From: Octopus sinensis
Taxonomy: Eukaryota
Direction: 5' to 3'
Assembly: GCF_006345805.1 (NCBI RefSeq)
Contig: NC_043022.1
Location: 24,056,001 to 24,120,000, forward strand
DNA: 64,000 bases
Under the pieces are notes generated by a model. It ran no database searches, was not told the DNA's origin, and worked only from the letters and a program-made list of their open reading frames with translations. Both the position numbers and the translations under genes were made by a program. Positions 8,209 to 56,300 of the stretch are shown here, piece by piece. The stretch's first letter is position 1. Every line of letters begins with the position of its first letter.

Positions 8209-8478
8209 GTGTGTATATATATATATATATGTTATATATATATATATATATGTGTTATATATATATATATATATATATATTGTATATATATATATGTGTG
8301 ATATATATATATATGTATATATATATGTATGTATATATATATATATATGTGTGTGTATATATACATATATGTGTATATATATATGTGTGTGTATATATAC
8401 ATATATGTGTATATATATATAATATGTGTGTATATATATATATATGTATATATATATATGTTGTATATATATATATGT

Positions 8479-12175: not shown

Positions 12176-13004
12176 CTATCTAGAATGAGCCTCAGGATCC
12201 GTAGAGCTAGAATGGCTATCTCGTTTGTCTTTCAACTCATTTGCACTGTCTAATGGACTATTTGCCTTTGATTTTGAACTGGCGGGAGAGTTTGTATGAC
12301 TGCGAGGATGTGATGTAGTCGATGAGGGAATCAGAGGGGGTGGGGCCCCTGGTATACTCGCTGGGGAGTTACTCTTACTAGAATGGTTGACCATAGGACT
12401 GACGGTGCGGGGGAAATGTCCGACCGACAACGGATCAACGGCTCTCAATGCCGGCAGTTTGTTTTGCTCGTACTCGTAGCGTTCTCGTTCAAAGAACGGC
12501 ATGCGTTCAAACATCCGTTCTCTTAGATAAAGGTCTCGCATGTGTTCGCGCTCTCGCTCGCGTTCAATATCTCGTAAGTCTAATCGGTGATGCGCAACAT
12601 CGAAACCTTTCTCGTAGTGACTCCAAACCCCGAGCTGTGGACGTTCGTTACTGAAATATCGTGGTCCAATCATGCGTGCCCTTTCCAGCATGTTGACAGG
12701 CATGGTGGCTGCAGTATGGGATAGGGGGCCAAACAAATACTCGTTACTTCGTAACAGTTTATCGCGTTCGAGTAGTTGAGCCTCTTCCTCTCGGCGTTCC
12801 TCTTTGATCTTTATGCTGACCTTCTCTTCGTGGCGTTTATCAACCACCTCAGCTTTGGCTGCTTCAAGCCGACCGTTTCTTATCGGGGAACGAGATCGGG
12901 ATCGCGACCGACGTCTTTCTGCTTCTCTGTATCTGTCGCTTCGATCCTTCTCCCTACCACGGTCAATATCAAGACTGGTTAACCTCTCGAGGTTTCTTCT
13001 TTCT
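12176..13004 (-). CDS. AUTS2: AUTS2-like terminal coding exon (RS/RE-rich, IKIKEERRE, to stop), phase 2->stop
   Basis: Acceptor ttactattttcag|A within the 284-aa ORF. IKIKEERREE resembles vertebrate VKVKEERKED. The joined CDS is 4320 nt, a multiple of 3. Confidence 0.92.
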
Positions 13005-13087: not shown

Positions 13088-13460
13088 TAGGTGGCTGTGT
13101 GGTAAGTAGCTTGCTTACCAACCACATGGTTCCGGGTTCAGTCCCACTGCATGGCACCTTGGGCAAGTGTCTTCTACTATAGCCTCGGGTCGACCAAAGC
13201 CTTGTGAGTGGATTTGGTAGACAGAAACTGAAAGAAGCCCGTCGTATATATATATATATATGTGTCTGTGTTTGTCTCCCCAACATCGCTTGACAGCCGA
13301 TGCTGGTGTGTTTATGTCCCTGTAAACTAGCGGTTCGGCATAAGAGACCGATAGAATAAATACTAGGCTTACAAAGAATAAGTCCTGGGGTCGATTTGCT
13401 CGACTAAAGGCGGTGCTCCAGCATGGTCACAGTCAAATAACTGAAACAAGGAAAAGAGTA
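13088..13460 (+). mobile_element. SINE family A, near full length, in the last intron
   Basis: GGTGGCTGTGTGGTAAG head through CTGAAACAAGGAAAAGAGTA tail. Confidence 0.85.
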
Positions 13461-14201
13461 TATGAAACAAACTACTAGCCTTTCTTGACTACTCCAGAAG
13501 GTAATTAACAGTGACAGGGATTTAAGTATAAAATCATACAACAGCTAACAATCTTGTTGATTCTGTTGGAACAATCTCTTGTAACAGGTAACAAGAGCCA
13601 ATGAGGGAGCCCTACAAGGTCTCACAAGTTGCTAGAAATAGAAACTACATCCTACTTCCGAGAAAAAAAGGATATATTGGATGTGGTCATATTTACAATA
13701 TTATGTCTGAAAACTAAATGACAAGATGGTCATGGCTAAGACCTTTCAGTATAGGTCTGCTGGGTCAAAATTGACCAAAGGCTAAACAACAATATCTATA
13801 ACCATTAATACAGATCATTTAATATTCCTCATCCATGCTGGCAATGGGTTGGATGGTTTGACAGGAGCTTGCAAGCCATAGGACTGCACCAAGCTCCAAT
13901 GTCTAATTCTCCACAATTTACAGAGTGGACTGGGTGCTTTGTACATGGCATCAGAACTGGTGAGGTCTAGCACCACTCAAAACTTAGAAAATTTTTTTTC
14001 TAATTTCTAGAGCATAAACCTAATTACACACTGTCTGTTTGCTTCTGTGTTGATAAATTATTTTGCACCATACATTACATGGGTAAAATAAAAGAAACAG
14101 CCAGAACTGGGATGTCTTTGATTAGGGTCGACCAAGATCAAAGCAGTTAGGGGTCACTAACAGGAAGGTCATGGCCGGAACCAAAGAGCAAATCTACGTA
14201 C

Positions 14202-14391
14202 CGTTCACGTTCTTCTTCTTTCCTTCTGTCATGCAGACTCAGCTCCCTCTCCCGCTCCTTCTCCCGTTCATCGGTTTTGGGCCACGTTGGCGGAGTAGGG
14301 AAAGATGAAGGTGTCTTGTGTAAGCGGTTCCATTCTGGAGACAGTGTTGACATGCTGGACAGTTCTCTGGCACCATTAAATAAACTATTTC
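14202..14391 (-). CDS. AUTS2: AUTS2-like exon GNSLFNGARELSSMSTLSPEWNRLHKTPSSFPTPPTW...EEERER, phase 1->2
   Basis: Acceptor ctttgtgtcttgcag|GA, donor CG|gtacgt. WNRLHKTPSSFPTPP matches the family motif WNRLHRTPPSFPTPP. Confidence 0.93.
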
Positions 14392-15199
14392 CTGCAAGAC
14401 ACAAAGAGAACGGGTTAAAGATTTAGAAGTCTTTAGAATACAAGCAAAAAATAGGGATTCAGTCAGAAATGTGATGACATTAAGATCATTGGGGGGGGAC
14501 ACACACACAGAAGGAGACTTTAAGGGGGTCCACCAACCGTCAATATCTCTGTTTATATATATTATCATCTGACGCCATGATAGATTGTGGTGGGAGGAGA
14601 GGAGAGTGGTAGGGAAGGTGGTGATGATGGGATAGGGGGCAGACAGCGTAACAGAGAGAGAGAGAGACAATGATGATGTGGAAGGAGAGAGAGAAGTCAA
14701 AGGAGAGAGCAGCAGCATAGAGAGAAGGTGGAGGACTAACTGGTAAGAGAGAAGGGAGTACACGTAAGTGCTACTCAAAAGCTGTGTATATATAATATAT
14801 AAGTGATAGGTATAAAATCATACAACAGCTAACAATCTTGTTGATTCTGTTGGAACAATCTCTTGTAACAGGTAACAAGAGCCAATGAGGGAGCCCTACA
14901 AGGTCTCACAAGTTGCTAGAAATAGAAACTACATCCTACTTCCAAGAAAAAAGGATATATTGGATGTGGTCTTATTTACAATATTATGTCTGAAAACTAA
15001 ATGACAAGATGGTCACGGCTAAGACCTTTCAGTATAGGTCTGCTGGGTCAAAATTGACCAAAGGCTAAACAACAATATCTATAACCATTCATACGTAATG
15101 TGTGATTACTGGATTGTAGAGAAAGGTAAATTCAGCATAAGGTAGAGGGGACAGGTTTCACAAGGTAAACTGTTGACGTTTAAAGTAAGTAGTTCTTAC

Positions 15200-15253
15200 C
15201 TAGACCAGGGAAGCCAACACTGTACGGAGATGGCCGTGCAAATGGTGATACAC
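15200..15253 (-). CDS. AUTS2: AUTS2-like 54-nt exon GVSPFARPSPYSVGFPGL, phase 1->1
   Basis: Acceptor ttttttgcttgtatttcag|GT, donor CTAG|gtaaga. PFARPS resembles vertebrate PFNRPS. Confidence 0.88.
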   Translation of the reverse strand: MYHHLHGHLRTVLASLV

Positions 15254-16566
15254 CTGAAATACAAGCAAAAAATAGGGATTCAGTCAGAAATTTGATGACA
15301 TTAAGATTACTGGGGGCAGGAGACTTTAAGGGGGTCCGCCAACCGTCAATATCTCTGTTGATATATATTATCATCTGATGCCATGATAGATCGTTAGCCA
15401 CTACACACATTTTTTTCTCTCCTTGTTTTTTCTGTGTCCCTTTCTGTAGAAGAGCATAGGCTCGAAACGTTATACTAATACAGCTGTTTGTTTTGTACAC
15501 CACCTGTCTTCGTCTTTTGTTTTTTTTTCATAAACTGTCCCTATATTTTATCATCTGTATGTTTGTATGACAGTACATTCAATAATGTCACACACGACAA
15601 TAGATACAATATATTATACACACACAACAGTAGACAGAGTATATTACACACATACGTGAGAGTACATACAGTGCCTCACACACACATACAGAAAAATACA
15701 GGCATGCCTCAACTTAGGTCATCTCAAGTTGTGTCTTTCTCGACTTCACATTGGTTTTTTTTCTTTCTTAAAAAAAATGACTAGAAAGAAATAAACCTCA
15801 ACTTGAGTCAATCTATCTGACTTTAACATCAGTATCAAGTAAACATATTTAAAAACATAGAAATTCAAAAAGAACCTAAAACCCAACACTGAAGTAGAAA
15901 ATCAAATAAAACACGTGTAAATCATTTAAAACACACATAAGGCAAATCACCATCATTTAATGTTCGCCTTCCATGTTAGAACGGGTTGGACAGTTTGACA
16001 GGAGTCAGCCAGGTGGGAGATTGCACTAGGCTTTGGTATAGTTTTTACAGTTAAATGCCCTTCCTAATACTAACCACCTTGCTGAGTGGACTCAGTGCTT
16101 TTTACGTGGCACCAGCACAGGAGAGGTCGGTTTCGGCATAGTTTTTACAGCTGGATGCCTTTCCAAATGCCAAACACTTCACAGTGTGGTCTGGATGCTT
16201 CTTACGTGGCACCTGCAGAGTCACCAAATAACTTGCAAGACAAGGAATCCTTGAGAGGGGGACAGGGAATCTTGTGCCAGATGATGAAAGGTTAGGGTGT
16301 TACATTGTTTTTCAAGTCAAGTCAAATTTTTTGGAACTGATTCTGATGTAAGTTGAGGTGTCCCTGTATAAACAATATCTCACTCATACACACGCAACAG
16401 TAGATTTGAATCAGTGAGACCCTAAGGACCTTACCTATATGAGCTGGGTTTAAAAAGCTGCTGTGGTGTGTGGGCCCTGAATCAAATGGAGGTCTTGTAG
16501 ATCCTGAAACGAAACAGAATATATAATAATGAGTGTTTATTTATTCACATTGTTTCAAATTAATCA

Positions 16567-16866
<300 letters not shown>

Positions 16867-17789
16867 CTAGAATAGAAAAAATACAGAACAAGATGAATTA
16901 CATCAAGATCATTAACATCATCATCAATATATATATATATACATTAGTTTCAAATTTTGGCACAAGGCCAGCAATTTCGGGGGAGGTGTTAAGTCGATAA
17001 CTTCGACCCCAGGACCCAACTGGTATTTATTTTATTGACTCTGAAAGGATGAAAGGCAAAGTTGATCTCAGCAGCATTTGAACTCGGAATGTAAAGCCAG
17101 ATGAAATGTTGCTAAGTATTATGCCTGGTGTGCTAATGATTCTGCCAGCTTGCCGCATTCATCAATATATACATGTTGTTAGTTATTCCATCAAGTCAGT
17201 TTAGTCATTGGACGGTTTGACAGGAGTCAGCCAGGTGGGAGGCTTTGGCATGGTTTTTACAGTTAGATGCCCTTCCTAATACTAACCACCTTGCAGAGTG
17301 AACTCAGAGCTTACGTGGCACCAACACAGGAGAGGTCAGTTTCGGCATAGTTTTTACAGCTGGATGCCCTTCCAAATGCCAAACACTTCACAGTGTGGCC
17401 TGGATGCTTCTCATGTGGCACCTGCAGAGTCACCAAATAACTTGCAAGACAAGGAATCCTTGAGAGGGGGACAGGGCATCTTGTGCCAGATGATGAAAGG
17501 TTAGATGATAGCTTAAAGCATGATGTGTTAAGTGTAGTATTGATATTAGGTGTGAGTGTGTGTGTCGATATATCTTCTGAGCTGGTTGCTTGTGCACATG
17601 CACACACGTTTTGTAATTAGCACCTGCACGATAAAATAAAGGGGAAGGCAGCTGAGCAACAATCATGTAGTTATTAGTTTATTATGGAATTTAATGTTGT
17701 CGGTTACTCATATAAGAGCTTGAAAAAGTAAAAGACCCACAGTGGGGGTGGGCATGGCTGGAGATGAAGTGAAAAGGGTATGTAGTTAC

Positions 17790-31100: not shown

Positions 31101-34100
31101 ACTTTTTCTTTGAAAGGGTGTCTGGGTAAGAGGGGATCAAAACCTATGCAAGTGAGGGATGTCAACCAACTCGACAAGCCGATCTGGCCCTCAACGTTTA
31201 TAGAAGGCAGATAATATTGAATAGAGAGGATGAAAGACAGATACATTGCACGTGAGACAGAAGGGGAGAGAGAGGGACGGAGGGGGGATGTTAGCTTTAA
31301 CTTTAGAAATTTTCTGTACCAAACGGGTGGTTGATGGGCAGTCGGTGGGGGTTCTTAAGAGTTTCTGAAAGGGTCATTAAAAAAGAAACAGGGCCTGTAG
31401 GAGTGGATGGGGTGGGATAGAGGAAGGTATCAAGACGAATCAAGGAAAAATAAGAATCGATAAATAGTAGTAGTAGAAGTAGTAGTAATAATAATAACAC
31501 GCAAATAAATTATGCAAGAAATCAAGACTATTAGTGGAGAAAAATTGAAAATGTATATATATATATACATATATATAGGTAATATATATATATATGTATA
31601 TATAAAATAAAGAGGAAAAAACTAAACAAAGGGAAGCTGTCAAAAATGCGAAGGTGAAACAGAAGAGGTTTAATTGCAAAGTAGTTAGTGAAAAAGGTAA
31701 AGTAGCAAAAAGCTTTTGGTCAGAGAATGGTAAAAAGGTTGTAGCAAGAAAGGTATGAGCCTAAGCTAAGAACAAGCTGCTTGCTGGCAACAAAAGCTCT
31801 TTTCAAACGAAGCCATGTTGTTGACAGAAAAGATTTTGAAACGTACGTAAGTATGGACTAATAACAGACGGACAGAGACCGCCAGGAAAATCCAAATGCT
31901 CGCACTGCTTCGATGTTGGAGGAGGGCGAGCTAGAAAAAGAAAAACACAGGCGTTAACTTATTCCACACTTTGCCCCATCTCGCAAGAACGACTTAAAAC
32001 CCAAAGGAAACTTTCAAGAAAAAAATCAAGGTAAAAAAAAAAATAATAATAATAATAATTTAAAAAAAAACAACCCCAAACAAAAGCCACTTCCCACTGA
32101 CAAAAAATTGAAATAAATAAAATAAAATAAAAATAGTTAAAATAAATTAATCTTGCTACAATAGTTTATTAATACTGAAAAGGATAAACAGGTTACTAAC
32201 GAGTCATTAGATATTTAACAGATTTCTCATAATTTTTTTATAAAGGAGGGAGGATAGTCTTTTTTCCTCTCCCTTGTGAATTTCAGTTTCATTCCATTTC
32301 ATTCCCAGGCGAAATGGCAGGCCTTAATTGACAAAGTGAAGGAATAATTAAAAATTAAGGAAAAAATATGATATCATTAACAAAAACACTAATGAAGTAC
32401 TTCAATATCTCATCAACAGTTTTTTTTTAATCACCACTCATGTGGTTTGGTATTTTGTAACTGACTTGCAATCTATTGACTGCGGGTTCAAACTGAGTGA
32501 TTGTTACATAGTTCCTCGCTTCATTCCAGCCAGAATGCTTGTGTGTGTGTGTGTGTGTGTTTCTTAATTGGCAGCTCATTGTTATGGATACCAGAAATAA
32601 GTATCAACTATGTAAGAACAATCATAAGGGTTAAGGAAACAATTTGACTTCATTTTAGGGTTTTTTTTCTCCCACATTTTTCTTGTGGAGTAGAGACTGT
32701 GTGTGTGTGTGTGTGTGTGTGTGTGGAACAACAAAGAAAAATACAATTGTTTGAATGTGATATCATTCTGCTTCTTGAATCGTTAACAAGGAAGCAAGAC
32801 GGAACGTATGAGATAGTTTAAAAGGCCATTTATAGATATATTCAGCAACTTAATAAATTAAAAACAGGTGCAAGTGAGGAAAGGCCAAAAAAAAAAGAAA
32901 AAAAAAGGGGGGGGCCAATTTATATGGAAGAATGGATTCTGTTAGGATTTCTGTATAAACAGCGATTTATCGATGGTCATGTAAATTTACTGGAACGTAA
33001 AATGATCTGAGCCGATTTACACGTTAACAGTTACACGCAGCAGCCTTGTGCAACTGCGGAGTGTTTATATAGCAGCGATGTAGCACTTCGGGGAAAACTG
33101 ATAACAGATCTTTGATTGTGTGCCAGCTGGCAGTTTTGAATTCGAGAGTGAGGGATGGTTGGTGATATGGTGAGGGAACACTGACAACTGGACCATGTCT
33201 CGATAATGGACAGCTCCGATACTTTCTATTGACCGACTGCAAGCCAACAGAATTAAGACAACCGTAGTTTGGTCTGTCTCTTACTATCACTTTCGTTATC
33301 ATATTTCTGGTGAAATACACAGCCTTTGTTTCAACAAATTTAGAACATAAAATTACTGTGAAATTTTGATGGAAAATTTAAATCAGATAAATTTAAAGCA
33401 GGAAATTTGCAACATTGCACCAAAGGCAGTTTCAGGGCAGGTTCGTAGCAAAAGGATTAACTGATTACTCAGTGATAGTAGCATTGACCTGTTTGTCTTG
33501 ACAAATAACAGAACGGTGTTAAGTTCAGTCAGTGATTGGTAGAACAACATTTGCAGTGGTGTGTGTGTGTGTTTGTACATTCTTGATCAATTACCATATG
33601 TTGTCTAATTGATCAGACCCATGAGTGGTTCAGCCATTACCATCCAATCTTTTTTTACTAGCAACTAGGAGTTCCAGTATTATTTATAGTAGAGGATCTC
33701 AACTGGGGTCCATATAAGATTTTGTTGTTAAGAATTAGGCGCAGTAAATTTGTTATATTTCTACAATGCATAAAATATTTTAATAATTCTTTTTTATACA
33801 ATTACTAATAATATTTAATTATAAAAATATACTGGGATTTTTTAAACACTGAATGTCTGTAGAGGATGGGGGGGGGGGTCCACTTGAGTGGAAGAAAAAT
33901 CAAAAGGGTCCATAGATAAAAAACTGGTTGAGAACCACCGATTTAAAGAGTGTCTTTCTCATTTTGTTTTTAATAGATGGTAAGGGACAATTTAAGGGAG
34001 ATTTGACTGTGACTGCAATTTCTAGTGGGCTGAACAATTCTGAAGGAGCACCCTTTGTAGGCTCAAGCCCCACCATAGACCATCTAGAAGACACCTTCAC

Positions 34101-38711: not shown

Positions 38712-39022
38712 ATGTACCTGAATAAGACGGGCCCGAGTGTGATGGGCCTGAATGAGATGAGCCCGAATGAGATGGCCCCGAGTGAGACGGGCCTGAATGA
38801 GAAGTTCCTACGTAGGAAGGGCCAGAATGGGAAGAGCCCGACTGAGATAGCCCCGAATGAGATGAGCCAGAGTGGGAGGAGCCAGAGTGAGAGGAGCCAG
38901 AGTGTAATGGACCGTGTGGGAAGGTCCCGAATGCGATGGACCTGAATGAGAAGGTCCTGAATGTGATGGACCAGAGTGGGAGGGTCCCGAGTGCGTGGGT
39001 GCCGAGTGTGGCAGAGCAGAGT
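38712..39022 (-). pseudogene. Intronic 311-bp copy of AUTS2 exon segment 39710-40021 (HSGPS array) with a 1-bp deletion
   Basis: Nearly base-for-base identical; GGACCGGTGTG is GGACCGTGTG in the copy. Confidence 0.85.
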
Positions 39023-39138
39023 TAACGTCCGCTTTCCATGAGTTGGACACATGATTTGGAATACTTAGGTGGGAGATGTGTAGAATAATGGAAACTCATG
39101 ATACGAGACAGAGAAGACAAGGGAAACTGGATCCTTAC

Positions 39139-41401
39139 CTAGTCCATCCGACAGAGCTCTTGGAAATGTACGGCAACGTTTCTTTCTCTTTTGTGAGGAC
39201 AGGATCGTCTCGGCGTGGAAGTGCTCTGGGAGAGGGCGGCGTTCGTTTTGGGGCTTCACGAACTATAGGCGGCACTGGTGGTGGTGGTGGCGGCGGTTGC
39301 TGTTGAATTGATGAAGCAGCTTTTGACTGGGGGGAGGGACTCTTCAGATGGGGAGAAGGAGACAAGATAACTGAGGGGGCTGGAGGAAGGGGAGGTGGAG
39401 GTGGTAGAGGAGGCTTTGATGGCGGAGTTGGAGGTGTTGGCCCATTGACTGACAGTGATGGCAAGGGCGGAGTGTTGCTAGGGTGAGCAAGGTTGGAGGT
39501 GTGGTGGGTCAAAGAGGAACTAGGATAAGAACTAAGAGAATTAGAAAGAGGATGCACGGAGTGTGGGTGGGCAGAATGAGGGTGAGTGTGACTTGAGTGA
39601 ACAGAGTGGGAGTGGGATGAATGAGAAGTTGAATGGGTAGTAGTTATGTGAAGTGTTGAGTGAGATGGACCCAAGTGAGTTGAGCCCGGGTGCGACGAGC
39701 TCGAGTGAGATGTGCCTGAATGAGACGGGCCCGAGTGTGATGGGCCTGAATGAGATGAGCCCGAATGAGATGGCCCCGAGTGAGACGGGCCTGAATGAGA
39801 AGTTCCTACGTAGGAAGGGCCAGAATGGGAAGAGCCCGACTGAGATAGCCCCGAATGAGATGAGCCAGAGTGGGAGGAGCCAGAGTGAGAGGAGCCAGAG
39901 TGTAATGGACCGGTGTGGGAAGGTCCCGAATGCGATGGACCTGAATGAGAAGGTCCTGAATGTGATGGACCAGAGTGGGAGGGTCCCGAGTGCGTGGGTG
40001 CCGAGTGTGGCAGAGCAGAGTGGGTGGGTCCCGAGTGTGGCAGAGCAGAGTGGGTGGGCCCCGAGTGTGGTAGACCAGAGAGGGAGGATCCTGAGTGTGA
40101 CGGACCAGAGTGGGTGGGTCCTGGGTGAGAAGGACCGGAGTGGGTTGGTCCCGAATGTGATGGACCAGAATGCGTGGGTCCCGAGTGTGAGGGACCAGAG
40201 TGGGAGGGTCCCGAGTGAGAAGGACCAGAGTGGGAGGACCCTGAGTGAGAAGGACCCGAGTGGGAAGGTCCTGAGTGTGATGGACCAGAGTGAGACGGTC
40301 CTGAGTGAGAAGGACCGGAGTGAGAGGACCCTGAATGAGAGGACCCTGAGTGTGATGGACCAGAGTGGGTGGGTCCCGAGTGTGAAAGAGCTGAATTTGA
40401 AAGGTTCGAGAAAGAGTGGGTTAAGTGGGCATGAGTGGAGTGTGGGATTGTATAGTGAGTTGAGTGTGGGTTGGAATAATGAGGCAGAGAGTTGTGTGGC
40501 AAGGAGTTGTGAGAGTTATGTGAGAGTGTGTTGTGTGACTGTGTGTTGTGAGATGGTGTGTTATGTGGCTGTGTGTTGTGTGACTGTGTGTTGTGGGGCT
40601 GTGTGTTGTGGGGTAGTGTGTTATGGGACTGTGTTATGTGAGGTTGTGTGTTGTGTGGTTGGTTGCTGTGATGTTGTGTGTTGTGGAGTTGTGTGGTATG
40701 TGCTTGGTTGCTGTGAGGCTGTGTGTTGTGTTGTGGGTTGTTGTGAGGCTGTGTGTTGTATGGCTGTGAGTTGTGTGACAGGGAGTTGTGAGGCAGTGAG
40801 CTGTGTGGCAACGAGTTGTGTTGTTGTTGTTGTTGCTGCTGTTGTTGTTGTATTGTACTGTGTGCTAAGTTGTGTGGCTGGGAATGGTTGGGCAGAGAGT
40901 TGTGAGCAACGGTGCCAGATGAGGCCGAGGACGAGAATGTCGGGTGGGGAAAAGTCGGTGGAAGAGCTGTGGTGGGAAATGTGTTTGTGTTGTTGTTATT
41001 GTTGCTGTTGTTGTTGTTAGAGTTGCTGGCGTTATGTGGCTGAGGTGTAGAGACCGAGGCAGATACACTGCAACTGGGAGAGTTAGAAGTCGTGCCGGGA
41101 CTTGCAGCAATCGCAGAGCTGCTTGTTAGAGTTGTTGGTGAGTTGGTTGCGTGGGCGATGACAGCTACAGTGGGCGTGGCAGTGATGCTGGTGGCGGGAT
41201 TACCAGCGGTCAACGGGCTGCGTGTGCTGAAAGTATTGGTAGTTGTAGCTGGCACTGCAGTCACGCAGTTGCCGCTAACGCGGTTACTGTTGCTACTACA
41301 ACTGCTACTGCAGGTACTGATAACCCCACATATGGTGGTGATTGTTGTAGTAGTAGTAGTAGTAGTTGTTGTAGTTGTGGTAGTGGCAAGGTTACAGTTT
41401 C
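39139..41401 (-). CDS. AUTS2: AUTS2-like giant low-complexity exon (2263 nt; poly-T, poly-N, poly-Q, HNTQP and HSGPS arrays, Pro-rich), phase 1->2
   Basis: Lies within the 790-aa ORF 39135-41507. Acceptor tttttgcag|GA, donor ACTAG|gtaagg. Phases fit both neighbouring exons. Confidence 0.85.
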
Positions 41402-41676
41402 CTGCAAAAATATAAAAAAAACACATTGTCATTAATAACATCATAAGGTGGTAAGCATACCAGTCAAAACACTTAGTGCATTTCATCATCATCATCATCA
41501 TCATCATGCTGCTGGATTGGGTTGGGCAGTTTGATCAGAGCTGGCAAGATGGGGAGCTGCACCAGACTCTAGTCTAACTTGGTATGGTTTCTACAGCTGG
41601 ATGCCCTTCCTAACGCCAACCCTTTACAGAATGTGCTGGGTGCTTTTACATGGCACCGCACGGGCGCTTTATATAT

Positions 41677-47300: not shown

Positions 47301-49109
47301 CTAGGGATATAAGGACAATTATTGCAAGAACTATGTGGACAATTGGTTGGACAACTGCTTGAAATATCTGATAAGTAAGAAAACAACACATATACAGACA
47401 CACACAGAGTTGTATACAAACATATACATTCATATATAACAGAGATGTTAGAATGAATAAATGGAGCAAATTGTTGTCAAAGGAAACAAACAGTGAAAGT
47501 AGGCTGTATAGTCATAATGTAATCAACTAATTAATAGGTCTCTCTCACTTTCACATTGTATGGGTCTGGTGGAGGTGGTTGGGAACGAGAAAGTGAATGG
47601 ACCAGTAACCAAGACGAAATTTTTCTCTATGAAAACCTCACCCCGGTGGAAGCTTTGTTTTTCAACTGCCACACACACACACATACATATATACACACAC
47701 AGAAGCACATGTACAGATAGTTACACAAACCTGCAGGCATGGGGAGAGAGAGAAACAGAGAGAGCAAGGGAAGCGGAGAGGGTGAAGAAGACACATAGGA
47801 GAGAGAGAGAGAGAGAGAGAGAGAATCAGACAAATAGGACACAGACAGAGAAAGGAAGAGAAAAGGGAGAAAAAGAGACAGAGAGGAAAGTAGAGAGAGA
47901 GAGAGAGAATGGTACTCTGTCAGAGAAGAAGATGAAGTGAAATGCAATGAAATTTGCTGAAGATATGTTCTAATTATCGATTGATCTTCTCCCAAGTTGC
48001 CGTGATTGGTCTGTGCTAATTAACGATTAGCTTAGTGACAGAGCTATTGATTAATTAGCATGTTATCCGTGATACGAAAATAATAATTTCTGCTGAAACG
48101 ATAGTAATGACCACTGGCACATTTGAAGAAATAGGAAAGGTTTTGAAGCTATGTAAACACTGGGGGGAGAGAGGGAGAGAGGGGGGGGAGAGATGAGAGA
48201 GAGAGGGAAGGAGAGATGAGAAAGAGAGAGAGAGGGAGGGAAGAGAGATGAGAGAGAGAGGAAGGGAGAGAGAGGGAAGAGAGATGAGGGAGGGAGAGAG
48301 AGAACAAGAGACAGAAAGGGATAGAGAGAGAGCAAAGAGATTGATAGAAACGAGGTTAGTGTGAAAGGAGAAGGGAGATGGGAGTGGAGGAGAAGGGAAC
48401 TGGGATCGAAACTCATTAATCGCATTAGTCATTGCATTACATTTATTGATAATTAACTCATACCCAGCCATAACTCTTAACGAGCCACATGGTCCTGCTC
48501 GCCGAACCCACTCCACCTCTCCTTTTTATTACATATCGTAATCCTGAAATTACATTATCACACGAATGCAGATATTATTATCACTGACCGTTGGGAAGAG
48601 GAGAGAAGGGTTGTTACTAGGCAGTGTTAATCCTAAACACAGTTATCATTACACAGGGGCTAATCCCAAACACACACACACACAGGGCTAAGGTATATCT
48701 TTTATTGCTTATTTGTTTCAGGCTTAGAGTGCGGCCATGCTGGGGCACCGGCTTGAAGGGTTTAGTCATAACAAATTGATCTCTGTAATTGTTTTTAAGC
48801 CTGATACTTTCTATTGGTCTCTAAAACTGCTTAGTTATAGGGATGTCAACAAATCAATATCAGTTGTTGTCAAGTGGCAGGGGTGCACAGACACAAACAC
48901 ACACACATATATAAATATAGTTGAGTTTACGTAAAAAACAAAAGACGAAGACACGTGGTGTACAAAACAAATAGATGTATTAGTATAAGGCTCAGGAACA
49001 GAAAAAGTCTTTTACGTTTCGAGCCTATGCACTTCTACAGAAAGGGCCACAGAAAAAACAAGGAGAGAAAAAAATATGCGTAGTGGCTAACGATCTATCT
49101 ATCTATCTA

Positions 49110-54087: not shown

Positions 54088-54495
54088 TGGTAAGTAGCTT
54101 GCTTACCAACCACATGGTTCCGGGTTCAGTCCCACTGCGTGGCACATTGGGCAAGTGTCTTCTACTATAGCCTCGGGCCGACCAAAGCCTTGTGAGTGGA
54201 TTTGGTAGGCGGAAATTGAAAGAAGCTTGTCGTTTATATATATATATATATACACACACACATATATATATGTATGTGTGTGTGTGTGTGTCTGTGTTTG
54301 TCCCCCCACCAACATTGCTTGACAACTGATGCTGGTGTGTTTATGTCCCTGTAACTTAGTGGTTCGGCAAAAGAGGCTGATAGAACAAGTACTAGGCTTA
54401 CAAAGAATAAGTCCTGGAGTCGATATTTGCTCGACTAAAGACGGTGCTCCACCATGGCGGCAGTCAAATGACTGAAACAAGTAAAAGAGTAAAGA
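54088..54495 (+). mobile_element. SINE family A; its tail is repeated at ~55250-55470 by the 1 kb tandem duplication
   Basis: Head GGTAAGTAGCTTGCTTACC through tail GTAAAAGAGTAAAG. Confidence 0.85.
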
Positions 54496-56300
54496 GAGAG
54501 AGGGCACTCAGAGAGCATAAATTTCTGCCAAGGCAACACCAACGTCCTCTCAATGATTAACCAGAGATGATTTTTAAAATATCAATCCCGAAATCGAATC
54601 AGTTTATGCTAGTCATGAGGCCAAATATCTCTGAAAGTTTCATCTGAATCCATCCAGTGGTCCATGAGATATCTTGTCCACAGACAAACAAACAAACACA
54701 ACTGAAAACAATACCACCGCCTGAGAACTATCAGTGATACTGAAGGGGATGTAGCTAGCAATAGCAATGGATCATGTGTGTGTATGTTTCTGTGAGAAGG
54801 TGCACGTACAATCATGGTGTTCTTGAGCAAAACACTTCATGCTGCTTTAGTCCACTCAGCTGGTAAAAATAACCTTGTGATGGAATAGCCTTCCCATCAG
54901 TGGGGGAATGTTCGCCTGTTTGCCTAGTTGGCGGGGTGGGGTGGGTTGGGGGGCAGCAGCATTTGAAAGCTACAACGATACGAAGCACATTGCAACCAGT
55001 GGTGTATAAGAACATCTGATAGTCTGGTTGATACCATGATGGATATATATATATATACATATATATATGCACATATATATATATACATATATATATACAC
55101 ATATATATATATACATGTATATATATATACACACGTATATATATATACACACGTATATATATATATACACACGTATATATATACACATATATATATACAT
55201 ATATATATACACACACATATATATATATAACACACACACATATATATATGTATGTGTGTGTGTGTGTGTCTGTGTTTGTCCCCCCACCAACATTGCTTGA
55301 CAACTGATGCTGGTGTGTTATGTCCCTGTAACTTAGTGGTTCGGCAAAAGAGGCTGATAGAACAAGTACTAGGCTTACAAAGAATAAGTCCTGGAGTCGA
55401 TATTTGCTCGACTAAAGACGGTGCTCCACCATGGCGGCAGTCAAATGACTGAAACAAGTAAAAGAGTAAAGAGAGAGAGGGCACTCAGAGAGCATAAATT
55501 TCTGCCAAGGCAACACCAACGTCCTCTCAATGATTAACCAGAGATGATTTTTAAAATATCAATCCCGAAATCGAATCAGTTTATGCTAGTCATGAGGCCA
55601 AATATCTCTGAAAGTTTCATCTGAATCCATCCAGTGGTCATGAGATATCTTGTCCACAGACAAACAAACAAACACAACTGAAAACAATACCACCGCCTGA
55701 GAACTATCAGTGATACTGAAGGGGATGTAGCTAGCAATAGCAATGGATCATGTGTGTGTATGTTTCTGTGAGAAGGTGCACGTACAATCATGGTTTCTTG
55801 AGCAAAACACTTCATGCTGCTTTAGTCCACTCAGCTGGTAAAAATAACCTTGTGATGGAATAGCCTTCCCATCAGTGGGGGAATGTTCGCCTGTTGCCTA
55901 GTTGGCGGGGTGGGGTGGGTTGGGGGGCAGCAGCATTTGAAAGCTACAACGATACGAAGCACATTGCAACCAGTGGTGTATAAGAACATCTGATAGTCTG
56001 GTTGATACCATGATGGATATATATATATACATATATATATGCACATATATATATATACATATATATATACACATATATATATACATGTATATATATACAC
56101 ACGTATATATATATACACACGTATATATATATACACACGTATATATATATATATACACACGTATATATATATACATATATATATACACACACATATATAT
56201 ATATATATACACACACATATATATATACACACATACATATATACATATATATACACATATATATATACATATATATATACACACACACACACATATATAT
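54250..56300. repeat. ~1 kb near-identical tandem duplication
   Basis: Offset ~978 bp; breakpoints lie inside (TA)/(CA) microsatellites. Confidence 0.92.

What the first reader, a model, noticed from the sequence alone, without database searches (positions are those of the whole stretch)
13526..15391. Two different exons sit inside duplicated intron flanks: tandem duplication with reciprocal exon loss
Seen: X (13526-13806) matches X' (14810-15089) with about 5 differences in ~280 bp. Y (14437-14585) matches Y' (15258-15391). In transcript order this reads Y'-exon 15253-X'-Y-exon 14391-X. Y' supplies the acceptor of the first exon, while Y diverges at that AG. The two exons correspond to different consecutive parts of vertebrate AUTS2. 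Inference: Y-A-B-X duplicated in tandem, then copy 1 lost B and copy 2 lost A, restoring one ORF while rebuilding the intron from duplicated parts.
Basis: partly seen in the sequence, partly recalled or inferred. Interest (0 to 1): 0.7.

Follow-up and report, generated by a model that had tools for sequence, protein, structure and literature searches.

The report
Local copy-insertions enlarging an octopus intron
In an octopus AUTS2-like gene, the intron between two neighbouring exons grew from about 290 to 808 bases because copies of two nearby intron pieces were pasted into it; this is an ordinary, probably neutral repair or replication scar, and there is no sign that the exons were ever duplicated and lost.

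Summary
The repeats are real. X (13523-13811) and X' (14807-15094) are 98% identical. Y (14437-14588) and Y' (15258-15394) are 95% identical in two blocks. Each occurs only twice in the window. They flank two genuine, consecutive, in-frame minus-strand exons of an AUTS2-like gene: A (15253-15200) and B (14391-14202).

The orthologous Octopus bimaculoides locus is gap-free here. It also refutes the proposed route. The 181 nt between X' and Y (14770-14589) are the ancestral A-B intron, still in place and in order. Deletions from Y-A-B-X|Y-A-B-X cannot produce the order m2-X'-J-Y-m.

The window lineage instead carries two clean insertions into that intron:
- a ~322-nt copy of X, with a 9-10-nt target duplication;
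- a 152-nt copy of Y', with 2-nt microhomologies.

Both are in the source orientation and both have the same relative age, about a quarter of the divergence from O. bimaculoides. Y also carries the end of a lineage-specific transposon insertion, so it was copied from this locus.

The most likely cause is templated insertion by template switching during repair or replication, possibly in one event. Interest is low.

The parts
15200..15253 (-). Exon A of the AUTS2-like gene (54 nt, phase 1 to 1; encodes (G)VSPFARPSPYSVGFPGL)
   Evidence: AG|GT boundaries read. 100% tblastn match to L001 32037-32087 and to L002 8224-8274. Peptide present in P0001 and P0002.
14202..14391 (-). Exon B (190 nt; encodes GNSLFNGAREL...PEWNRLHKTPSSFPTPPTW...EEERE, the conserved WNRLH-TP-SFPTPP motif of AUTS2/FBRSL1)
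   Evidence: Pfam Auts2 spans it.
15258..15394 (-). Y', the source copy, at the ancestral position immediately upstream of exon A. It supplies the polypyrimidine tract of exon A's acceptor. Its outer 14-17 nt are the 3' end of the TE1 insertion, followed by TE1's target-site duplication.
   Evidence: Collinear with L001 31914-32030. TE1 junction shown.
14437..14588 (-). Y, the inserted copy of Y' (152 nt), lying 45 nt upstream of exon B. Absent from O. bimaculoides.
   Evidence: Junctions CCCACCAC|AATCTATC and GTATT|CTAAAGAC compared with the O. bimaculoides target CCCACCAC TT CTACCACCAGAC. Carries the TE1-flank junction.
13487..13811 (-). X, the source copy, at the ancestral position in the intron downstream of exon B (well-matched core 13526-13806)
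   Evidence: Collinear with L001 33147-33514, with no break at its edges.
14771..15094 (-). X', the inserted copy of X (~322 nt; core 14810-15089 is about 99% identical to X; the 3' 40 nt are degraded and TA-rich). Absent from O. bimaculoides.
15093..15102 (-). Left copy of the putative target-site duplication of the X' insertion (CACATTACGT)
   Evidence: A single ACTTCTGT site in O. bimaculoides (L001 ~32189-32200).
14762..14770 (-). Right copy of the putative target-site duplication (CACTTACGT)
14589..14770 (-). J, the ancestral middle part of the A-B intron, retained between X' and Y (pyrimidine-rich on the transcript strand, with small microsatellite expansions)
   Evidence: Orthologous to L001 32191-32324, which sits exactly between the orthologues of m2 and m.
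15103..15199 (-). m2, the ancestral 5' part of the A-B intron (exon A donor to insertion site a, a CA microsatellite)
   Evidence: Aligned to L001 32089-32174.
14392..14436 (-). m, the ancestral 3' part of the A-B intron, including exon B's acceptor
   Evidence: Aligned to L001 32338-32377.
15378..15541 (-). TE1, a ~164-nt repeat insertion with a 16-nt target-site duplication (CAGATGATAA[A/T]ATATA at 15557-15542 and 15377-15362). Specific to the window lineage. It dates Y as younger than itself.
   Evidence: Other copies at 48894-49099(-) and 2258-2379. Empty site in O. bimaculoides.
13814..13970 (-). Dispersed repeat with a ~100-nt period, abutting X. Present in both species and many times in the window.
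12176..13004 (-). Last coding exon (acceptor ttcag|A at 13004, stop TAG at 12178-12176)
   Evidence: 97% nt identity to L001 33513-34814.
16435..16503 (-). Exon Q, immediately upstream of exon A (STRPPFDSGPTHHSSFLNPAHI)
16653..16866 (-). Exon P ([22 protein letters not shown]...)

Best explanation
After the window species split from the O. bimaculoides lineage, two short stretches of this gene's own intron DNA were copied and inserted into the intron between exons A and B, in their original orientation. The source copies were not disturbed.

The first is a ~322-nt piece from about 0.9 kb downstream (X, beyond exon B). Its copy went in 97 nt after exon A's donor, at a CA microsatellite, leaving a 9-10-nt duplication of the target. 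The second is a 152-nt piece from just upstream of exon A (Y'). Its copy went in 45 nt before exon B's acceptor, with 2-nt microhomologies at both joints.

The ancestral intron (m2-J-m) is intact around and between the two inserts. The exons were never involved.

The most likely process (inferred, not shown) is templated insertion. A nascent DNA end in break repair or at a stalled fork left its template, primed on a nearby sequence by microhomology, copied a few hundred bases and returned to where it had left (MMBIR/FoSTeS-type template switching, or synthesis-dependent end joining). The two inserts have the same relative age and lie 181 nt apart, so they may be two excursions within a single event.

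The consequence is intron growth from 289 to 808 nt, probably neutral.
For: Orthologue comparison. O. bimaculoides (L001, no gaps between 24908 and 34814) is collinear with the window across 15420-13440 except for two window-only blocks. These blocks are exactly X' and Y. J aligns to L001 32191-32324, between the orthologues of m2 and m.

Polarity and age. X and X' differ at 4 of 283 aligned sites, and 15 sites separate both from O. bimaculoides. Y and Y' differ at 7 of 118 sites, and 21 sites separate both from O. bimaculoides. The ratios of paralogue to orthologue divergence are about 0.24 and 0.28.

The copies evolve independently. X' keeps 3 states shared with O. bimaculoides that X has lost, and Y keeps 3 plus the CCTTCT motif that Y' has lost. 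This argues against an assembly duplicate.

Local origin. Y contains the junction between the window-specific TE1 insertion, its target-site duplication and the unique intron. That junction exists only at Y'. X's edges are not breakpoints in the interspecies alignment.

Junctions. There are no poly(A) tails and no terminal inverted repeats (one search found 0 inverted repeats). GT(A/G)T, AC and TT microhomologies are present, along with the target duplication CAC(A)TTACGT and an error-rich 3' end of X'.

Recurrence. A third, older copy of the same kind lies in the same gene (17208-17504 copied from 15986-16295, 91%, no counterpart at that site in O. bimaculoides).

The mechanism class is documented in PMC8421209 (MMBIR templated insertions, several templates per event, microhomology) and in PMC7954356 (evolutionary short-range template switching).
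Against: Only one outgroup with alignable introns was available. Polarity therefore rests on paralogue versus orthologue divergence, which gene conversion could mimic.

Two-nucleotide microhomologies are weak evidence. A 9-10-nt target duplication is also what a staggered-cut (transposition-like) insertion leaves.

Templated insertions of 150-320 nt copied from 0.4-0.9 kb away are larger and more distant than the commonest class, which is tens of bases from within about 100 bp (PMC8421209).

Genome-wide copy number of X and Y could not be measured. Only about 100 kb of octopus DNA was on hand. No reads or second assembly of the window species could be reached.
Confidence: 0.7

Rival explanations
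1. One reading: one tandem duplication of the whole unit Y-A-B-X, after which the upstream copy lost exon B and the downstream copy lost exon A.
For: X' precedes Y in transcript order, as at a tandem-duplication joint. A+B is 244 nt, not a multiple of 3, so a doubled A-B-A-B would be selected against. O. bimaculoides has a single Y, a single X and a short intron.
Against: X' and Y do not abut. Between them lie 181 nt of the ancestral A-B intron (J), in the right orientation, orthologous to L001 32191-32324. Deletions from Y-A-m2-J-m-B-X|Y-A-m2-J-m-B-X can only give X'-Y-...-J, never X'-J-Y. No exon relics flank X' or Y.
Confidence: 0.03
2. Two independent tandem duplications, each followed by a deletion. 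First [J..B..X] was duplicated and most of the upstream copy, including its exon B, was deleted, leaving X'. Then [Y'..A..J] was duplicated and most of the downstream copy, including its exon A, was deleted, leaving Y. Each exon was briefly doubled and the spare was lost.
For: It is geometrically equivalent to the observed layout. The X-X' spacing (1284) and Y-Y' spacing (806-821) equal the required unit lengths. The 9-10-nt 'target duplication' at X' could be the stump of the deleted copy. The TT at the Y|m joint could be a microhomology-mediated deletion joint. Tandem duplications do occur in this window (54238-56226).
Against: It needs four events instead of two. Each deletion must also end within 0-10 nt of the earlier duplication joint, which is two unforced coincidences. 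No remnant of the deleted exon copies is seen. The matching relative ages of X' and Y would be a further coincidence.
Confidence: 0.12
3. X and Y are mobile or retro-copied sequences. They could be members of a dispersed repeat family. They could be LINE-mediated retrocopies of pre-mRNA or intron RNA. Y could be a 5'-truncated copy of TE1 carrying transduced 3' flank.
For: The X' insertion has a 9-10-nt target-site duplication. Y starts 14-17 nt inside the 3' end of TE1 and continues into its flank, which is the geometry of a 3' transduction. Both copies have the orientation of the transcript. The introns are full of repeats.
Against: There are no poly(A) or microsatellite tails, no terminal inverted repeats, no target duplication at Y and no further copies in the window or in L001. 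X has no element-like edges in the interspecies alignment. Two unrelated sequences each have their nearest relative within 1.3 kb, in the same orientation. Rfam finds nothing in X or Y.
Confidence: 0.07
4. Assembly artefact: X' and Y were introduced by mis-assembly or gap filling and do not exist in the animal.
For: No reads or second assembly of the window species could be examined. Short local duplicates are a known kind of assembly error (general knowledge).
Against: The copies differ from their sources by substitutions and indels. In several places they keep the state seen in O. bimaculoides where the source has changed. That is the pattern of independently evolving paralogues. A haplotype merge would duplicate contiguous blocks including exons, not two separate pieces placed crosswise.
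Confidence: 0.05

Closest known systems
Templated insertions from microhomology-mediated template switching (MMBIR / FoSTeS), e.g. PMC8421209
   Same: The inserted DNA is a copy of a nearby template. The source is left intact. Joints have short microhomology. More than one template can be used in one event. Synthesis near the joint is error-prone, which matches the degraded 3' end of X'.
   Different: The inserts here are 152 and ~322 nt, copied from 0.4-0.9 kb away in direct orientation. They are fixed in a species rather than somatic or pathogenic. The commonest described class is tens of bases from within about 100 bp. The mechanism is inferred from the scar only.
Short-range template switching seen in great-ape genome evolution (PMC7954356)
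   Same: A lineage-specific local rearrangement explained by a transient switch of the polymerase to a nearby template, detected by comparing sister genomes.
   Different: As I recall, and I did not read that paper's text here, those events are mostly very short and produce inverted, hairpin-forming copies that replace sequence. Here the copies are long, direct and purely additive.
Intron creation or expansion by tandem segmental duplication (from memory: Rogers 1989; Hellsten et al. 2011; not checked here)
   Same: Duplicated genomic segments end up as intron sequence and the reading frame is preserved.
   Different: That model needs a tandem duplicate containing AGGT that creates new splice sites. 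Here the splice sites are the ancestral ones, the duplicates are not tandem, and no exon sequence is duplicated.
LINE 3' transduction / orphan transduction (from memory)
   Same: Y consists of the last few bases of a repeat (TE1) plus its downstream flank, reinserted elsewhere.
   Different: Y has no tail and no target-site duplication, was inserted only 0.8 kb away, and has an unrelated partner event (X') beside it.

Membership tests
   181 nt of orthologous ancestral intron (14589-14770 = L001 32191-32324) lie between them.
   Sensitive blastn of the inter-repeat segments against each other found nothing. The flanks of X' and Y are contiguous in O. bimaculoides.
   L001 has Y at 31914-32030, X at 33147-33450 and a 289-nt intron. 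The insertion model predicts the same.
Templated insertion by template switching (MMBIR/FoSTeS-like) | The insert is a copy of a nearby sequence that itself stays in place | tested here: met
   X and Y' sit at their orthologous positions. X' and Y are extra.
Templated insertion by template switching (MMBIR/FoSTeS-like) | Synthesis returns to the point of departure, so the flanks of the insert are contiguous in the ancestral sequence | tested here: met
   Site a is CACAC|ATACTTCTGTG and site b is CCCACCAC TT CTACC, each contiguous in L001. The overlap is 9-10 nt at a and 0 nt at b.
Templated insertion by template switching (MMBIR/FoSTeS-like) | Microhomology at the joints | tested here: inconclusive
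   GT(A/G)T, C, AC and TT (1-4 nt) at the four joints. This is compatible with the model but close to chance expectation.
Templated insertion by template switching (MMBIR/FoSTeS-like) | Both inserts arose in one event | tested here: inconclusive
   Relative ages of 0.24 and 0.28 of the species divergence agree, but the counts are small (4 and 7 differences).
Transposable element or retrocopy insertion | Terminal inverted repeats or a poly(A)/microsatellite tail, target-site duplications, and multiple dispersed copies | tested here: not met
   No inverted repeats, no tails, a target duplication at X' only, and no other copies in 64 kb + 39 kb. Genome-wide copy number is not testable with these tools.
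AUTS2 / FBRSL1 gene family (identity of the host gene) | Auts2 domain (PF15336) with the WNRLHRTPPSFPTPP motif, and orthologues annotated as AUTS2 | tested here: met
   Pfam E 4.7e-33, profile positions 1-215 of 218. 98% identity to XP_014769813.1, 'autism susceptibility gene 2 protein homolog', O. bimaculoides. Alignment with vertebrate AUTS2/FBRSL1.

The most novel reading that the evidence does not exclude
The two inserts, and perhaps the older third one upstream of exon P, are products of one recurrent process in octopus genomes. In this process, short-range, same-orientation template switching copies a few hundred bases from about 1 kb away and returns precisely. X' and Y would be two excursions of a single MMBIR-like event that crosswise copied the outer flanks of two neighbouring exons into the intron between them. 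If such events are common genome-wide, they would be a measurable, non-transposon route of intron growth in cephalopods.
Probability: 0.3. Interest if true: 0.4.

Novelty: new member of a known kind. Interest (0 to 1): 0.2.

Why it matters
It matters little for gene function. Both exons, their splice sites and the reading frame are untouched, and the gene reads as a normal AUTS2 orthologue.

The value is methodological and evolutionary. A layout that looks like 'duplicated flanks around two different exons' invites a story of duplication followed by exon loss. One orthologous sequence shows instead two clean copy-insertions into an intact intron.

It is also a well-resolved example of intron growth by local templated insertion rather than by transposons. 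It has a source, a target, joints and a relative date, and it sits in a genome whose introns are otherwise dominated by SINE-like repeats.

One possible side effect is untested. The Y copy brings exon A's branch-point-like CTGAC and its pyrimidine tract to just upstream of an AG at 14432-14431. Use of that AG as an acceptor would add 39 nt with an in-frame stop.

Tried and rejected
Looking for the window species in independent data failed. Exact look-ups of three window ORFs found nothing: the last-exon ORF, the 179-aa ORF spanning J-Y-m-B and the 107-aa ORF spanning Y'-A. The 90% cluster of the O. bimaculoides protein holds only O. bimaculoides entries. I therefore did not spend a further large protein search on it.

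L002, a more distant cephalopod (ENA ERZ21867824), was tried as an outgroup. Its exons A (8224-8274) and B (from 9298) were found, with an intron of about 1 kb and no internal repeats. Its introns are too diverged to align with X, Y or J, so it cannot polarise the change.

I tested whether X or Y hides a structured RNA or an RNA gene. Rfam gave no hit in X or Y; the only weak hit, E 0.41, lies in the SINE at 13375-13454. There are no tRNAs. The X fold z-score of -1.7 is unremarkable.

I tested whether mid1 and mid2, the sequences between the repeats, are diverged copies of each other. There is no similarity even at word size 7.

The first MAFFT alignment placed the outer 20 nt of Y' against O. 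bimaculoides sequence. This was wrong. Those bases are the end of TE1, and the true orthologue lies at window 15590-15542.

The idea that X' starts exactly at a repeat boundary was dropped. X homology starts 7-12 nt beyond the end of the neighbouring 100-nt-period repeat, and O. bimaculoides reads through that point without a break.
Full report
**What is there.** The window is octopus DNA. A spliced model built from minus-strand exons is 98% identical to the O. bimaculoides 'autism susceptibility gene 2 protein homolog' XP_014769813.1. It carries one continuous Pfam Auts2 domain. The few amino-acid differences, and intron substitution divergence of about 6% in X and about 20% in Y, indicate a related species rather than O. 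bimaculoides itself.

The relevant exons, in window coordinates on the minus strand, are:
- P: 16866-16653
- Q: 16503-16435
- A: 15253-15200 (54 nt)
- B: 14391-14202 (190 nt)
- last coding exon: 13004-12176

All have canonical AG/GT boundaries and compatible phases. The A-B junction peptide is identical in the annotated O. bimaculoides protein and nearly identical in a transcript-derived protein of another cephalopod.

**The observation.** X (13523-13811) and X' (14807-15094) are 97.9% identical over 289 nt. Y (14437-14588) and Y' (15258-15394) match at 95% in two blocks separated by a 15-nt indel. Both pairs are direct repeats, and neither has any other copy in the 64-kb window. In transcript order the layout is Y' - exon A - m2 - X' - J - Y - m - exon B - ... 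- X. Y' homology ends 4 nt before exon A, and Y diverges at exactly that point.

**The decisive comparison.** I fetched the orthologous O. bimaculoides locus (L001, CM046626.1:18054691-18094116). It has no assembly gaps between L001 24908 and 34814. BLAST and a global alignment show the two species collinear from upstream of exon A to the last exon.

O. bimaculoides has one Y (L001 31914-32030, abutting exon A) and one X (33147-33450, downstream of exon B). Its A-B intron is 289 nt (32089-32377), against 808 nt in the window.

Relative to it the window has exactly two extra blocks inside that intron. The first is X' with about 40 nt of degraded continuation. The second is Y.

The 181 nt between X' and Y (J, 14770-14589) align block by block to L001 32191-32324. 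In O. bimaculoides that stretch lies directly between the orthologues of m2 and m. J is therefore not a duplication joint or filler. It is the middle of the old intron, still in place.

A tandem duplication gives Y-A-m2-J-m-B-..-X | Y-A-m2-J-m-B-..-X. Deletions alone can leave X' followed by Y followed by J, but never X'-J-Y. No exon relics or residual similarity between the inter-repeat segments were found. However, the insertion model makes the same prediction, and only the insertion model explains the position of J.

**Polarity, age and authenticity.** In three-way alignments:
- X and X' differ at 4 of 283 sites, while 15 sites separate both from O. bimaculoides.
- Y and Y' differ at 7 of 118 sites, while 21 sites separate both from O. 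bimaculoides.

The copies therefore arose after the species split, at about 0.24 (X) and 0.28 (Y) of that divergence. This is the same relative age within the noise of small counts.

X' retains three O. bimaculoides-like states that X has since lost. Y retains three such states, plus a CCTTCT motif, that Y' has lost. That is the behaviour of independently evolving paralogues, not of an assembly duplicate.

Just upstream of Y' sits a ~164-nt repeat insertion, TE1 (15541-15378). It has a 16-nt target-site duplication, other copies at 48894-49099 and 2258-2379, and an empty site in O. bimaculoides. Y contains the last 14-17 nt of TE1, then the target duplication, then the unique intron. That junction exists only at Y'. 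So Y was copied from this very locus after TE1 arrived, not from a dispersed family.

**Joints (read directly).**
- *Site a.* O. bimaculoides reads ..AATCACACACACACACACATACTTCTGTGTACTCCC.. . The window reads ..AATCACACATTACGT-ATG-[X' AATGG....GAGTAG]-CACTTACGTGTACTCCC.. . This gives a 9-10-nt duplication of the target, CAC(A)TTACGT, and a GT(A/G)T overlap with the sequence preceding X (..CTGTATTAATGG).
- *Site b.* O. bimaculoides reads ..CCCACCAC TT CTACCACCAGACTTC.. . The window reads ..CCCACCAC-[A ATCTATCATGG....GCTTGTATT]-CTAAAGACTTC.. . This is a clean insertion with AC and TT overlaps and no target duplication.

There are no poly(A) or microsatellite tails and no inverted termini. The 3' 40 nt of X' are much more diverged than its core and are TA-rich.

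**Mechanism (inferred).** Two copies of nearby sequence were each inserted with a return to the departure point. The joints have short overlaps and the sources are intact. This is the signature of templated insertion by template switching during break repair or at a stalled fork (MMBIR/FoSTeS class, PMC8421209; evolutionary short-range template switches, PMC7954356).

The inserts lie 181 nt apart, share an orientation and have matching relative ages. A single event with four switches is therefore plausible: forward to X, back, then back to Y', forward again. It is not proven.

The closest alternative is two tandem duplications, each trimmed by a deletion that removed the spare exon. This needs four events, and each deletion must end within 0-10 nt of the earlier joint. 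Retro- or transposon-mediated copying lacks tails, inverted repeats and further copies. An assembly artefact is contradicted by the pattern of substitutions.

**Context.** The same gene holds an older event of the same kind. Window 17208-17504, upstream of exon P, is 91% identical to 15986-16295, which lies in the Q-A intron 1.2 kb downstream. Its next-best relative is the O. bimaculoides orthologue of that source (81%). It has no counterpart at its own site in O. bimaculoides. Short-range copy-insertion thus seems recurrent here.

Rfam, tRNA and folding checks found nothing functional in X or Y.

**Verdict.** It is wrong on mechanism, because there is no evidence of exon duplication and loss. 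This is an ordinary, probably neutral, structural scar of a known kind. Interest is low (0.2).

**Limits.** Only one alignable outgroup was available, no genome-wide copy number could be measured, and no reads of the source species could be examined.

Noticed in passing
window 17208-17504 and 15986-16295: A third local copy in the same orientation within the same gene. The two segments are 91.3% identical and 1.2 kb apart. The upstream one has no counterpart at its site in O. bimaculoides (L001 28953 to 28985 contiguous). It shares window-lineage-specific stretches with its source, so it is an older copy-insertion of the same style as X' and Y.
   Followed up: partly
window 39135-41507 (-) and 38712-39022 / 39710-40021: A 790-aa low-complexity ORF (poly-T, poly-Q, long HSGPS and HN(T/S)QP repeats; GC ~50% against ~40% around it). 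Its C-terminal 78 residues are 97% identical to the N-terminus of the older O. bimaculoides model P0041 (UPI00069549D4). It is probably a large upstream coding exon of the same AUTS2-like gene that the current 662-aa model omits. A 312-nt segment is repeated at 99% identity, 998 nt apart.
   Followed up: partly
window 54238-55249 and 55217-56226: A tandem duplication of about 1 kb at 97.6% identity, containing SINE-like and microsatellite sequence.
   Followed up: no
window 13091-13469: A SINE-like element (translated fragments read ...HLPKVP.SGTEPGTMWLVSKLLTT...) inserted in the last intron. It is absent from O. bimaculoides (L001 33513/33514 contiguous). More than ten copies at 90-95% identity occur across the window.
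   Followed up: partly
window 15378-15541: TE1, a ~164-nt repeat with a 16-nt target-site duplication, specific to the window lineage. Other copies at 48894-49099 (followed by a (TATC)n(TA)n tail) and at 2258-2379.
   Followed up: yes
L001 ~32843-32890 and ~33047-33146, against window 13814-13970: O. bimaculoides has one extra unit of the 100-nt-period repeat. It also has an extra 107 nt resembling a SINE head, flanked by TTAAA(A)TGAT direct repeats, between that repeat and X. These are lineage-specific indels on the O. bimaculoides side.
   Followed up: no
window 14431-14432: The Y copy places a branch-point-like CTGAC and a T-rich tract just upstream of an AG (CTAAAG|AC), 39 nt before exon B. 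If this AG were used as an acceptor it would add 39 nt with an in-frame TAA. The AG itself is ancestral, but in O. bimaculoides it is preceded by C-rich sequence.
   Followed up: no
L002 (ENA ERZ21867824 ctg109476l): A contig in an ENA 'metagenome' assembly is cephalopod host DNA carrying the AUTS2-like gene (exons P, Q, A, B and the last exon at 1379, 5802, 8224, 9298 and 10391). Its last exon was called as a 409-aa prokaryote-style ORF.
   Followed up: partly
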